64,000 nucleotides of DNA from NCBI RefSeq assembly GCF_020745735.1, contig NC_083413.1:14446001-14510000 (forward strand). Reading direction: 5' to 3'. The notes below the pieces were generated by a model. That model was not told the origin of the DNA and searched no databases. It saw only the letters and a program-made list of their open reading frames with translations. Within the stretch, counting starts at the first letter, position 1; every line of letters starts with the position of its first letter. Shown here piece by piece: positions 25,516 to 26,748 of the stretch. The position numbers and the translations under genes were made by a program. Origin of the DNA: Hemiscyllium ocellatum. Lineage: Eukaryota.

Positions 25516-25609
25516 GTAAAGTTAAAAATCACACAACACCAGGTTATAGTCCAACAGGTTTATTTGGAAGCACTAGCTTTCGAAGCGCTGCTTCTTCATC
25601 AGGTGGTTA
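25516..25609 (-). mobile_element. Penelope pLTR fragment in the presumed 3' UTR of P2RY14-like copy A
   Basis: 9-bp TSD TGTTGCAGG (25507-25515 and 25610-25618). Same family as 57333-57750. Confidence 0.85.
25571..25605 (-). ncRNA. Minimal type I hammerhead ribozyme motif
   Basis: CAC-CUGAUGA-A-GAAGC-AGC-GCUUC-GAAA-GC-UA-GUG: complete core, stems I and II paired, palindromic stem III (AGCU). Confidence 0.7.
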
Positions 25610-25776
25610 TGTTGCAGGCTTTGCTGCCTCTCCCATAAGGAACAGTCAAGAGTGTGACATAATATTTGTTGCATGACATATACCTTGATCAAAGGAGCCA
25701 ATAACAAATGATTTAGTTTGTTAGAGTTGTCCTGTTTGGGCACATATTGTTTTGGCAGTGACTATTTATGTCTCAC

Positions 25777-26748
25777 TTAAGACATTTCTATTTCGAGATC
25801 CTGTTGTATTCGCATCTTTTTAAATAACAGCTTAGTAAATAGTTTGCACAGCAGGAAGTAGATGACTGGATCGAGGCAAACGTTAAATGCACAAAGCAGC
25901 TGTGATGCTTCCTTTGCATAGTACAGCCTGTTGAATGCTGTACAGTTTGTTTGGTTCTTTCGAACCTGCTCATAAGGAAGTCTGATAATTTGATAAGGTA
26001 CAAAGCAGATGATGAAGACCGCCATGATGCTGAAAATGTTACGATTTACTCTCTTTTTGACGTTGCTGGAGTCCGTTTGCACTTTCTGATCGGACCAGTA
26101 TATCTTGTTTAAGATGGCTGAATAACAGATAATGAGGAGCACAAAGGTGACCCAGAAAATAACTTGGCATTTTAAAATGATGAAATGATGCCAGGTTTTA
26201 CCCAGCTCACTTTTCAACCTTAAGCACTGTGCAGCGTTATCCTTTGTGGGGATGTGGTTTGTCAGAATGACATTTGGCAGTGCAAAGCCTGTCATACATA
26301 CCCAGCAACCCACACTGACATACTTGGCAACGGAGACCTTTTGCACAGTCAGGTTTCTCATGGGGCGCACTATCTTTAGGTACCTGTCAAAGCTGATGAG
26401 GCCAAGGAATATGATGCTCAGGTACATGCAGTTGTAGAAGATGACGAGAGTGTAACGACACGCGATTGCTTGCAGCTGCCAGGGCCCAAGATGTGACTCA
26501 GACAGGATTTTGAAAGGCAGTGTCATGGTCATTAGCAGATCAGCGGTGACGATGTTCTTGAGATAAACGACAAAGCTGGAGTGACTTGGTATATGACAGA
26601 AGATCCAGGCAGCCAGTGTGTTCAGCAATAAGCCTCCAACAAAAACAAAGAAATACAAAACTGGAAGGACCTCCATTGTCACTGTTGGGTTCCGCAAGGT
26701 TTTGCAGTCAGTGCTGTTAGAAGAATTACTGTTTGTGGTCATCATCAT
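25777..26748 (-). CDS. P2RY14: P2Y purinoceptor 14-like, copy A (323 aa)
   Basis: Intact 7TM ORF with P2Y14-like segments LGPWQL, ISFDRYLKIV, KSELGKTWH, RNIFSI and NVCLDP. Splice acceptor ttttcAG at 26757-26758 lies just upstream of the ATG. Confidence 0.9.
   Translation of the reverse strand: MMMTTNSNSSNSTDCKTLRNPTVTMEVLPVLYFFVFVGGLLLNTLAAWIFCHIPSHSSFVVYLKNIVTADLLMTMTLPFKILSESHLGPWQLQAIACRYTLVIFYNCMYLSIIFLGLISFDRYLKIVRPMRNLTVQKVSVAKYVSVGCWVCMTGFALPNVILTNHIPTKDNAAQCLRLKSELGKTWHHFIILKCQVIFWVTFVLLIICYSAILNKIYWSDQKVQTDSSNVKKRVNRNIFSIMAVFIICFVPYQIIRLPYEQVRKNQTNCTAFNRLYYAKEASQLLCAFNVCLDPVIYFLLCKLFTKLLFKKMRIQQDLEIEMS

What the first reader, a model, noticed from the sequence alone, without database searches (positions are those of the whole stretch)
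25516..25777. Sense-oriented hammerhead ribozyme plus poly(A) signal, donated by a Penelope fragment, in a P2RY14-like 3' UTR
Seen: a 94-bp PLE fragment with a 9-bp TSD lies about 170 nt past the stop codon of copy A. On the mRNA strand it reads CAC-CUGAUGA-A-GAAGC-AGC-GCUUC-GAAA-GC-UA-GUG, a complete minimal hammerhead core. AAUAAA (25564-25559) begins 9 nt after the predicted cleavage site (25574/25573) and is followed by a GU/U-rich tract. This is the first canonical AAUAAA after the stop. Stem II is fully paired as GAAGC/GCUUC, whereas related copies here (~1560, ~31865, ~57400) are GAG/CUC-type and degraded. Known: PLE pLTRs carry minimal hammerheads that cleave mainly as dimers through a palindromic stem III, and rodent Clec2 mRNAs have 3' UTR hammerheads. 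Inference: the insert may supply the gene's poly(A) site, and dimer-dependent self-cleavage would remove the tail. That would be a concentration-dependent off-switch present in only one paralogue. It may equally be a neutral insertion.
Basis: partly seen in the sequence, partly recalled or inferred. Interest (0 to 1): 0.75.

Follow-up and report, generated by a model that had tools for sequence, protein, structure and literature searches.

The report
Penelope hammerhead fragment in receptor 3' UTR
A 94-base piece of a very common shark jumping gene, carrying a minimal hammerhead ribozyme motif and a textbook poly(A) signal, landed just behind one P2RY14-like receptor gene; it is an ordinary, lineage-specific insertion that might shorten the mRNA tail region but almost certainly is not a ribozyme switch.

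Summary
A 94-bp insert (25609-25516, minus strand) is flanked by a perfect 9-bp target-site duplication and starts 167 nt after the stop of an intact P2RY14-like gene of Hemiscyllium ocellatum. It carries a complete Penelope-type minimal hammerhead, then AAUAAA 9 nt past the predicted cut site, then a GU/U-rich tract.

It is one of seven minimal hammerheads in this 64-kb window (0.005 expected by chance). The scan's notes list about 510 hammerhead/Penelope findings in this genome, at least four of them sense copies in probable 3' UTRs.

The orthologous locus of Stegostoma tigrinum has an empty site, so the insert is lineage-specific and unconserved. Stegostoma has no AAUAAA or AUUAAA for 590 nt after the stop, and both species share an AUUAAA about 800 nt downstream. 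The insert therefore probably lies inside the ancestral 3' UTR and adds a strong-looking proximal poly(A) signal. Use of that signal is untested.

The ribozyme off-switch is not supported:
- helix III is absent in a monomer;
- helix I is 3 bp and forms in 5% of the predicted ensemble;
- no compatible partner lies in cis;
- the predicted dimer Kd is about 4 µM;
- published Penelope hammerheads do not cleave as single motifs.

Verdict: a new instance of a known kind, of low interest.

The parts
25777..26748 (-). P2RY14-like receptor gene, copy A: single-exon CDS of 323 aa including the stop codon
   Evidence: ORF. Pfam 7tm_1, E 6.8e-42. Best hits are named P2Y purinoceptor 14-like in Chiloscyllium and Stegostoma. 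The gene is nested antisense in a Med12-family gene.
25610..25618 (-). Upstream copy of the 9-bp target-site duplication CCTGCAACA
   Evidence: Read directly. Stegostoma has one copy of the site, CTGCAAC.
25516..25609 (-). 94-bp retrocopy of the hammerhead-to-tail end of a Penelope-type repeat family (single arm, no poly(A) tail)
   Evidence: It is absent from the orthologous Stegostoma locus L001.
25571..25605 (-). Minimal type-I hammerhead motif. It comprises helix I CAC/GUG, the CUGAUGA box, an unpaired A, helix II GAAGC/GCUUC with loop AGC, the GAAA box, and the palindromic A-GC-U. The predicted cut lies between 25574 and 25573.
   Evidence: The features match the min-HHR description in PMC4209133. 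No Rfam family matches, even at E<=10.
25559..25564 (-). AAUAAA hexamer, the first canonical poly(A) hexamer after the stop (offset +212)
25524..25540 (-). GU/U-rich tract, 19-35 nt after the hexamer; a candidate downstream element
   Evidence: 8 UGU/GUG/UUUU words in the +15..+50 window, against a background mean of 1.85 and a maximum of 9 in this 3' flank.
25507..25515 (-). Downstream copy of the TSD CCTGCAACA
24911..24916 (-). AUUAAA conserved with Stegostoma (L001 4770), with a U-rich, UGUA-containing upstream region; the probable ancestral poly(A) signal
   Evidence: The surrounding 100-column alignment block is 80/89 identical, and homology ends about 140 nt further on.

Best explanation
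The feature is an ordinary 94-bp retrocopy of the 3' end (minimal hammerhead plus tail) of an abundant Penelope-type repeat family.

Origin. It was inserted by target-primed reverse transcription, which left a 9-bp TSD. The site lies about 160 nt past the stop of one P2RY14-like gene. The insertion happened in the Hemiscyllium/hemiscylliid lineage after the split from Stegostoma.

Ribozyme. The hammerhead is a passenger. In this mRNA it has no helix III, a 3-bp helix I, a competing fold and no partner copy. I therefore expect no meaningful self-cleavage.

Poly(A) signal. The one part likely to affect the host gene is the element's AAUAAA plus GU/U-rich tract. Placed inside the ancestral ~800-nt 3' UTR, it is predicted to act as a proximal alternative poly(A) site. 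That would give a 3' UTR of roughly 230-250 nt alongside the longer ancestral form.

Shown: identity, boundaries, family membership, absence from Stegostoma, motif completeness, and the poly(A) hexamer landscape. Inferred: that the site lies in the 3' UTR, that the poly(A) signal is used (about even odds), and that the ribozyme is inert.
For: - Boundaries and TSD.
- Family: five other copies in the window. Seven min-hammerheads of at least 3 families occur in 64 kb against 0.005 expected. All seven have the unpaired nucleotide 5' of helix II that PMC4209133 lists as a Penelope min-HHR hallmark.
- Insertion style: sister copies are fold-back hairpins, the known Penelope insertion scar.
- Lineage specificity: the flanks are collinear with Stegostoma L001 and the site there is empty.
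- 3' UTR placement: Stegostoma has no AAUAAA/AUUAAA until +592. An AUUAAA at about +800 is conserved in both species, with a U-rich, UGUA-containing upstream region.
- Strength of the inserted signal: a canonical hexamer, and one of the best GU/U word counts in the whole 3' flank.
- Ribozyme inertness: ensemble probabilities are helix II 0.53, the competing GAAGCA/UGCUUC pairing 0.38, and helix I 0.05. The fold is no more stable than shuffles, z = -0.39. The AGCU/AGCU duplex is -2.5 kcal/mol and the Kd for any dimer is about 4 µM.
- Literature on activity: single motifs are inactive and dimers weak (PMC4209133; PMC6765202). The Anolis Penelope hammerhead is inactive without the element's protein, and no RNA-seq ends were found at its cut site (PMC11167929).
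- Precedent: PLE-related, hammerhead-bearing non-LTR retrozyme copies that overlap exons in Xenopus lie mostly in 3' UTRs (bioRxiv 10.64898/2026.07.22.740005).
Against: - No transcript data could be reached, so neither the extent of the 3' UTR nor use of either poly(A) signal is shown.
- Two weak hexamer variants lie upstream of the insert: CAUAAA at +6, and ACUAAA at +59, which is conserved in Stegostoma. They could end the mRNA before the insert.
- Thermodynamic predictions ignore tertiary contacts, proteins and co-transcriptional folding.
- Hundreds of thousands of related copies in other RNAs could in principle act as trans partners.
- No full-length Penelope element (RT plus GIY-YIG) of this family lies in the window. 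The 'Penelope' label therefore rests on motif architecture and insertion style.
Confidence: 0.55

Rival explanations
1. Silent passenger. The insert lies in the 3' UTR, but its poly(A) signal is used little or not at all. Transcripts run on to the conserved distal AUUAAA (24916), and the insert has no measurable effect on the gene.
For: - The 3' flank beyond the insert stays well conserved with Stegostoma. Identity is 73/81 in the block just after the insert and 80/89 around the distal AUUAAA, which fits continued use of the long UTR.
- There is no UGUA in the 60 nt upstream of the inserted hexamer.
- Such copies are so common that most must be tolerated as neutral.
Against: The inserted signal is canonical AAUAAA with a near-optimal GU/U-rich tract at the right distance. 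From general knowledge of vertebrate 3'-end formation, such sites in terminal exons are usually used to some extent. Conservation with slowly evolving shark DNA is weak evidence of function.
Confidence: 0.3
2. Outside the mRNA. The transcript ends before the insert at a non-canonical signal (ACUAAA at +59, conserved in Stegostoma, or CAUAAA at +6). The insert would then be plain intronic DNA of the host Med12-family gene.
For: ACUAAA at offset +59 is present in both species. No transcript evidence places the insert in an exon.
Against: ACUAAA and CAUAAA are rare, weak variants (general knowledge). A stronger conserved AUUAAA with a typical U-rich/UGUA context lies at about +800.
Confidence: 0.1
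3. The insert supplies the poly(A) site, and dimer-dependent hammerhead cleavage 9 nt upstream of AAUAAA removes the tail. This would act as a concentration-dependent off-switch specific to this paralogue.
For: - The core is complete and in sense orientation, with every conserved position intact, H17 = A and a palindromic AGCU.
- The cut site lies between the stop and the poly(A) signal, as in the rodent Clec2 hammerheads (PMC6765202).
- Helix II differs from sister copies by paired changes.
Against: - No helix III is possible in a monomer. Helix I is 3 bp and forms in 5% of the ensemble. A competing helix forms in 38%.
- The only other minus-strand copy with an AGCU interface is 32 kb away, and the nearest other minus-strand copies have ACGU interfaces.
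- The AGCU/AGCU duplex is about -2.5 kcal/mol and the predicted dimer Kd about 4 µM. By my own order-of-magnitude estimate, a receptor mRNA is present at picomolar to nanomolar levels.
- Single motifs are inactive in vitro and dimers weak (PMC4209133). Cleavage needs the element's protein, and no cut ends were seen in RNA-seq (PMC11167929).
- The insert is absent from Stegostoma, and the A-U pair of stem II recurs in copy ~39400.
Confidence: 0.04

Closest known systems
Minimal hammerheads of Penelope-like elements (Cervera & de la Peña 2014, PMC4209133; reviewed in PMC6765202)
   Same: - The CUGAUGA and GAAA boxes are present.
- There is an unpaired nucleotide between A9 and 10.1.
- The G10.1-C11.1 pair is present.
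- Helix II is 5 bp, slightly longer than the 4 bp of canonical hammerheads but shorter than the 6-8 bp described for PLE min-HHRs; helix I is short.
- There is no helix III, only a palindromic 15.1-16.1 tetranucleotide (AGCU).
- The motif is dispersed in huge numbers as truncated single copies and inverted pairs.
   Different: - Helix I here has only 3 contiguous pairs, against the 4-5 described.
- No adjacent RT/GIY-YIG ORF or pLTR context is visible.
- The shark family itself is not described in the papers I could read.
Discontinuous hammerhead in rodent Clec2 3' UTRs (Martick et al. 2008, as summarised in PMC6765202)
   Same: A sense-strand hammerhead cut site lies between the stop codon and the poly(A) signal, so cleavage would detach the tail.
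   Different: The Clec2 ribozyme is a full three-helix hammerhead assembled from two distant segments, and it cleaves in vitro (PMC6765202). From my own knowledge it is also conserved among rodents. The present motif is contiguous, lacks helix III, is lineage-specific, and belongs to a class that is inactive as a monomer.
Transposable-element-derived poly(A) signals / alternative polyadenylation (e.g. PMC3517506, PMC3554611)
   Same: A sense-oriented retroelement fragment brings a canonical hexamer and downstream element into a host transcription unit.
   Different: The known cases are mostly mammalian L1, Alu and LTR elements with usage data. Here the donor is a Penelope-type mini-element and usage is unmeasured.
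Non-LTR retrozymes / Penelope-derived non-autonomous elements in vertebrates (bioRxiv 10.64898/2026.07.22.740005; PMC7229834)
   Same: These are short non-coding hammerhead-bearing units related to Penelope pLTRs. In Xenopus the few exonic copies lie mostly in 3' UTRs.
   Different: Retrozymes are defined by tandem arrays and circular RNA products. This is a single dispersed 94-bp copy with a TSD.

Membership tests
Penelope-type minimal hammerhead (min-HHR) | Conserved catalytic boxes CUGANGA and GAAA, and a cleavable U-H dinucleotide (H not G) | tested here: met
   CUGAUGA at 25602-25596, GAAA at 25581-25578, U16.1 at 25575 and A17 at 25574.
Penelope-type minimal hammerhead (min-HHR) | [quoted passage not shown] | tested here: met
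   A25595 is unpaired. G25594 pairs with C25582. All 7 descriptor hits in the window share the 5' unpaired nucleotide. The feature is listed in PMC4209133.
Penelope-type minimal hammerhead (min-HHR) | No stable helix III; positions 15.2-16.2 are palindromic, allowing a dimeric helix III | tested here: met
   A-GC-U (25578-25575) is self-complementary (AGCU). No loop is possible in a monomer.
Penelope-type minimal hammerhead (min-HHR) | Helix II 6-8 bp in PLE min-HHRs (canonical hammerheads have 4 bp); helix I short at 4-5 bp | tested here: inconclusive
   Helix II is 5 bp. Helix I has 3 contiguous pairs (CAC/GUG), then a C·C mismatch, then 2 A-U pairs. Its ensemble probability is 0.05.
Penelope-type minimal hammerhead (min-HHR) | Lies in the terminal repeat (pLTR) of an element encoding RT plus a GIY-YIG endonuclease | not testable with these tools
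   No full-length element of this family lies in the window, and the shark genome cannot be searched. There is indirect support only: the TSD, 5' truncation, absence of a poly(A) tail, and fold-back sister copies.
Penelope-type minimal hammerhead (min-HHR) | Self-cleavage, at least as a dimer | not testable with these tools
   This needs in vitro transcription assays.
Rfam hammerhead families (types I, II, III, HH9, HH10) | A score at or above the family's gathering threshold in a covariance-model search | tested here: not met
   There was no hit at the gathering score over the whole window. There was none at E<=10 over 25400-25750. This is expected for a motif without helix III.
Clec2-type regulatory 3' UTR hammerhead | A complete three-helix hammerhead, conserved across species at the orthologous site | tested here: not met
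   There is no helix III. The insert is absent from the Stegostoma orthologue.
TE-derived poly(A) site | A canonical hexamer plus a U/GU-rich downstream element inside a sense-oriented TE within the transcription unit | tested here: met
   AAUAAA at 25564-25559 and the GU/U tract at 25540-25524. Placement within the 3' UTR is inferred from the hexamer landscape in both species.
TE-derived poly(A) site | mRNA 3' ends mapped to the site | not testable with these tools
   The exact-protein look-up found only the genome assembly and no transcript contigs.

The most novel reading that the evidence does not exclude
The Penelope mini-insert acts as a two-part 3'-end module acquired by a single receptor paralogue. 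Its strong AAUAAA/GU-rich signal becomes the main poly(A) site. The hammerhead 9 nt upstream is then cleaved when helped in trans, either by Penelope protein or by the many related hammerhead-bearing RNAs in the cell. Cleavage removes the tail and ties receptor mRNA stability to retroelement activity.
Probability: 0.03. Interest if true: 0.7.

Novelty: new member of a known kind. Interest (0 to 1): 0.17.

Why it matters
As it stands, this is a routine annotation: one more truncated Penelope-type hammerhead copy in a genome that holds a very large number of them.

It has modest value as a clean, datable example, with an empty site in Stegostoma. It shows how such mini-elements can drop a ready-made poly(A) signal into a 3' UTR. 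They could thereby shorten the UTR of one member of a young receptor gene family.

A genome-wide count of sense against antisense copies in 3' UTRs would show whether these AAUAAA-bearing fragments are selected against. That is a more useful question than the single locus.

Only direct evidence of cleavage in vivo would make the ribozyme part interesting.

Tried and rejected
- Rfam at the gathering score over the whole window, and at E<=10 locally: no hammerhead family matched. I take this as a limit of the models for motifs without helix III, not as evidence against the motif.
- First fixed-spacing pattern search: it failed because I miscounted the spacer. A regex and a descriptor scan replaced it.
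- Orthologous DNA from Chiloscyllium punctatum and C. plagiosum, and this genome's own contig: not retrievable because the files are too large. Presence or absence within Hemiscylliidae, and polymorphism, remain unknown.
- Transcript contigs for the exact protein: none on record.
- Paralogue comparison as an internal empty site: rejected. Copies A and B align only within the CDS (95.7% over 904 bp), and the flanks are unrelated.
- Long helix I: considered after seeing complementary tails in copy ~31866. It proved to be the fold-back arm of a hairpin insertion and is not part of the ribozyme. The arm is absent from the insert studied.
- Lünse et al. 2017 is not held in the library. I cite it only through the review PMC6765202.
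- Sequence look-up in the scan's earlier notes was blank.
- A relative-rate test of the distal UTR was considered. I dropped it for lack of an alignable outgroup.
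Full report
**1. What is there**

On the minus strand the window carries an intact 323-codon ORF (26748-25777). 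It has a rhodopsin-family 7TM domain (Pfam 7tm_1, E 6.8e-42). Its nearest proteins are named 'P2Y purinoceptor 14-like' in Chiloscyllium punctatum and C. plagiosum (93-94% identity) and in Stegostoma tigrinum (84%).

The exact protein is recorded on a 99.7-Mb contig of assembly GCA_020745735.1. From my own knowledge this is Hemiscyllium ocellatum, the epaulette shark. The gene lies nested on the opposite strand inside a Med12-family gene.

Three further 7TM ORFs of the same kind lie on the same strand: 180-1187, 42819-43778 and 62135-63190.

Starting 167 nt after the stop, a 94-bp segment (25609-25516) is bracketed by two perfect copies of CCTGCAACA, at 25618-25610 and 25515-25507. On the mRNA strand it reads:
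- CAC-CUGAUGA-A-GAAGC-AGC-GCUUC-GAAA-GC-U-A | GUG, with the predicted cut between 25574 and 25573;
- then 9 nt, followed by AAUAAA (25564-25559);
- then a GU/U-rich run at 25540-25524.

**2. Is it more than chance, and what family is it?**

The tail motif of the insert recurs six times in the window, against 0.00 in shuffles. BLAST and alignment show related copies at 57417-57330(-), 31855-31952(+), ~1560(-), 39389-39451(+) and 38005-37975(-).

I wrote a descriptor for the minimal hammerhead. It requires the two boxes, a helix II of at least 4 bp, a self-pairing 15.2/16.2 dinucleotide and a U-H site; helix I pairs are counted but not required. It finds seven motifs from at least three sequence families in 64 kb, against 0.005 in shuffles. 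[quoted passage not shown]

Cervera and de la Peña list the traits of the minimal hammerheads in Penelope-like element (PLE) terminal repeats (PMC4209133):
- the unpaired nucleotide;
- the G10.1-C11.1 pair;
- a palindromic 15.2-16.2;
- a longer helix II and a short helix I.

The insert shows the first three; helix II is 5 bp, short of the 6-8 bp described, and helix I has only 3 contiguous pairs.

Sister copies show the insertion style typical of these elements:
- Copy ~31866 is a hairpin with 42-nt inverted tails around the hammerhead.
- 13850-14347 is a 248-nt, 99% perfect head-to-head palindrome with a hammerhead in each arm.

No Rfam hammerhead model matches. That is expected for a motif lacking helix III.

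No RT/GIY-YIG ORF of the family lies in the window. 'Penelope-type' is therefore an assignment by architecture and not by linkage.

The scan's own notes (unchecked leads) hold about 510 hammerhead/Penelope findings in this genome. They include ~90-bp 'hammerhead-only' insertions and at least four other sense-strand hammerheads in probable 3' UTRs.

**3. Age and conservation**

The Stegostoma tigrinum locus (L001) is collinear with the window on both sides of the gene. The 5' flank, the CDS and about 750 nt of the 3' flank all align.

The 100 bases 25619-25520 of the window have no counterpart there. The alignment jumps from L001 4131 to 4149, and Stegostoma has a single CTGCAAC site.

The insert therefore arose after the split of the hemiscylliid and Stegostoma lineages and is not conserved. 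DNA of the two Chiloscyllium species could not be retrieved. The finer date, and fixation, remain unknown.

Paralogue B (42819-43778) is 95.7% identical to copy A over 904 bp, but only inside the CDS. The flanks are unrelated. 'Present in only one paralogue' is therefore true but uninformative.

**4. Is it in the 3' UTR, and does it bring the poly(A) site?**

No transcript evidence was reachable. The following are indirect arguments.

- In Hemiscyllium the AAUAAA of the insert is the first AAUAAA/AUUAAA after the stop, at +212.
- In Stegostoma, which lacks the insert, there is none before +592.
- An AUUAAA at about +800 (window 24916 = L001 4770) is conserved within an 80/89-identical alignment block.
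- That distal site has a U-rich, UGUA-containing upstream region, and homology between the species ends about 140 nt beyond it.

This makes an ancestral 3' UTR of about 0.8 kb the likeliest reading, with the insertion inside it.

The inserted signal looks strong. It has the canonical hexamer. It also has 8 UGU/GUG/UUUU words in the +15..+50 window, against a mean of 1.85 and a maximum of 9 over the whole flank.

TE-borne poly(A) signals that terminate or shorten host transcripts are well documented (PMC3517506, PMC3554611). I give about even odds that this site is used in an appreciable share of transcripts.

Two weak variants upstream could instead end the mRNA before the insert: CAUAAA at +6, and ACUAAA at +59, the latter conserved. 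I rate that at about 10%.

Among the five sister copies, one has AUUAAA and none has AAUAAA at this position. Whether AAUAAA is the family's ancestral state cannot be decided from this window.

**5. Can the ribozyme act as a switch?**

The core is formally complete, but the context is unfavourable.

- *Helix III.* A monomer has no helix III. A15.1 and U16.1 are separated by only G and C.
- *Helix I.* It is CAC/GUG followed by a C·C mismatch. Its probability in the predicted ensemble of a 154-nt context is 0.05.
- *Competing fold.* The 5' strand of helix II (GAAGCA) can pair with UGCUUC just after the cut site. Probabilities are 0.38 for this pairing and 0.53 for helix II. In short contexts the misfold is the minimum-energy structure.
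- *Overall stability.* The 110-nt segment folds no better than shuffled sequence, z = -0.39.
- *Cis partner.* The only other minus-strand copy with the same AGCU interface is 32 kb away. The nearest other minus-strand hammerheads have ACGU.
- *Trans dimer.* The AGCU/AGCU interface is worth about -2.5 kcal/mol. The best predicted dimer of any kind has a binding free energy of -7.7 kcal/mol, a Kd of about 4 µM. By my own order-of-magnitude estimate, a low-abundance receptor mRNA is present at picomolar to nanomolar levels.

The biochemistry in the literature points the same way:
- A single PLE min-hammerhead showed no detectable cleavage. Dimers and trimers cleaved weakly, mostly at non-physiological Mg2+ (PMC4209133; summarised in PMC6765202).
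- The only reconstituted vertebrate PLE hammerhead was inactive without the element's own protein.
- No RNA-seq reads began or ended at its cut site (PMC11167929).

Copy ~57400 also passes the descriptor. Copy ~31866 has a 5-bp helix II with a compensatory G-C swap. The A-U pair at 10.2-11.2 recurs in copy ~39400. PLE hammerhead families are known to be full of such covariation (PMC4209133). I rate the off-switch at about 4%.

**6. Most likely account**

Shown:
- It is a lineage-specific, TSD-flanked, 94-bp retrocopy of the hammerhead-to-tail end of an abundant Penelope-type family.
- It lies in sense orientation behind one P2RY14-like gene.

Inferred:
- It lies in the ancestral 3' UTR.
- Its poly(A) signal adds a proximal 3' end, giving a UTR of about 230-250 nt instead of about 880 nt.
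- The hammerhead is a catalytically silent passenger.

A simple density argument shows that such a placement is unremarkable. The window holds 7 intact-core motifs in 62 kb of non-N sequence, about 0.06 per kb per strand. Under random insertion, several percent of kilobase-sized 3' UTRs would carry one in sense. The scan's other notes and the Xenopus observation agree: there, the few exonic copies of hammerhead-bearing, PLE-related retrozymes lie mostly in 3' UTRs (bioRxiv 10.64898/2026.07.22.740005).

**7. Comparison and novelty**

It works like, and by four of the five sequence traits (helix lengths inconclusive) is, a PLE minimal hammerhead fragment. Linkage to a coding PLE and catalytic activity remain untested.

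It resembles the Clec2 3' UTR hammerhead only in where the cut site sits. It fails the defining features of that class: three helices and conservation.

As a donor of a poly(A) signal it is one more case of a known phenomenon, with an unusual donor class.

Novelty: new member of a known kind. Interest: low.

Noticed in passing
window 13850-14347: A 248-nt inverted repeat, 99% complementary with a 2-nt spacer. Each arm carries an identical minimal hammerhead of another family (CUGAUGA-U-GUUCCC...GGGAAC-GAAA-CG-UU). It looks like a very young head-to-head Penelope-type fold-back insertion.
   Followed up: partly
window 31818-31955 and 1495-1670: Two sister copies of the studied family are hairpin or rearranged forms. 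Copy ~31866 has 42-nt inverted tails around the hammerhead. Copy ~1560 has an antisense hammerhead remnant joined to a sense tail (15-nt perfect inverted repeat). Both share a leader beginning GTGGAG..GTTGGACTGGGTTGGACAA.
   Followed up: partly
window 26718-25815 vs 43754-42851: Receptor paralogues A and B are 95.7% identical over 904 bp strictly within the CDS, while their flanks do not align at all. This pattern suggests gene conversion between old duplicates.
   Followed up: partly
window 24916-24775 (minus strand) = L001 4770-4922: A highly conserved block (about 90% identity to Stegostoma) starts at a shared AUUAAA about 800 nt after the stop and ends abruptly about 140 nt later. It is the likely ancestral 3' end of the gene, or another conserved UTR element.
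   Followed up: partly
window 10656-10686 and about ten related segments (e.g. 23500-23690, 27700-28107, 33945-34207, 37115-37240, 45197-45308, 50930-51098, 60853-60929): A second, more abundant short repeat family is present. One copy retains an intact minimal hammerhead (CUGAUGA-A-GGGC-UCUG-GCCC-GAAA-CG-UC). Most other copies have decayed cores, and several are arranged as inverted pairs.
   Followed up: no
window 17133-17846 (-) and 54518-55126 (+): There are retroelement protein fragments. One is an integrase core plus an MLV-type integrase C-terminal domain (E 7e-9 and 2e-5). The other is a reverse-transcriptase fragment (RVT_1, E 5e-9). Neither is linked to the hammerhead copies.
   Followed up: no
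window 25516-25609, plus strand: Read on the strand of the host Med12-family gene, the insert is antisense and contains three CAG|GT motifs (CAGGTTAT, CAGGTTTA, CAGGTGGT). These are possible cryptic splice donors in that intron.
   Followed up: no
window 12474-13029, 20500-20635, 29205-29362, 29471-30400: Runs of N (1780 bases in all). The long overlapping 'ORFs' at 12208-13377 and 29105-30616 are artefacts of these runs.
   Followed up: no
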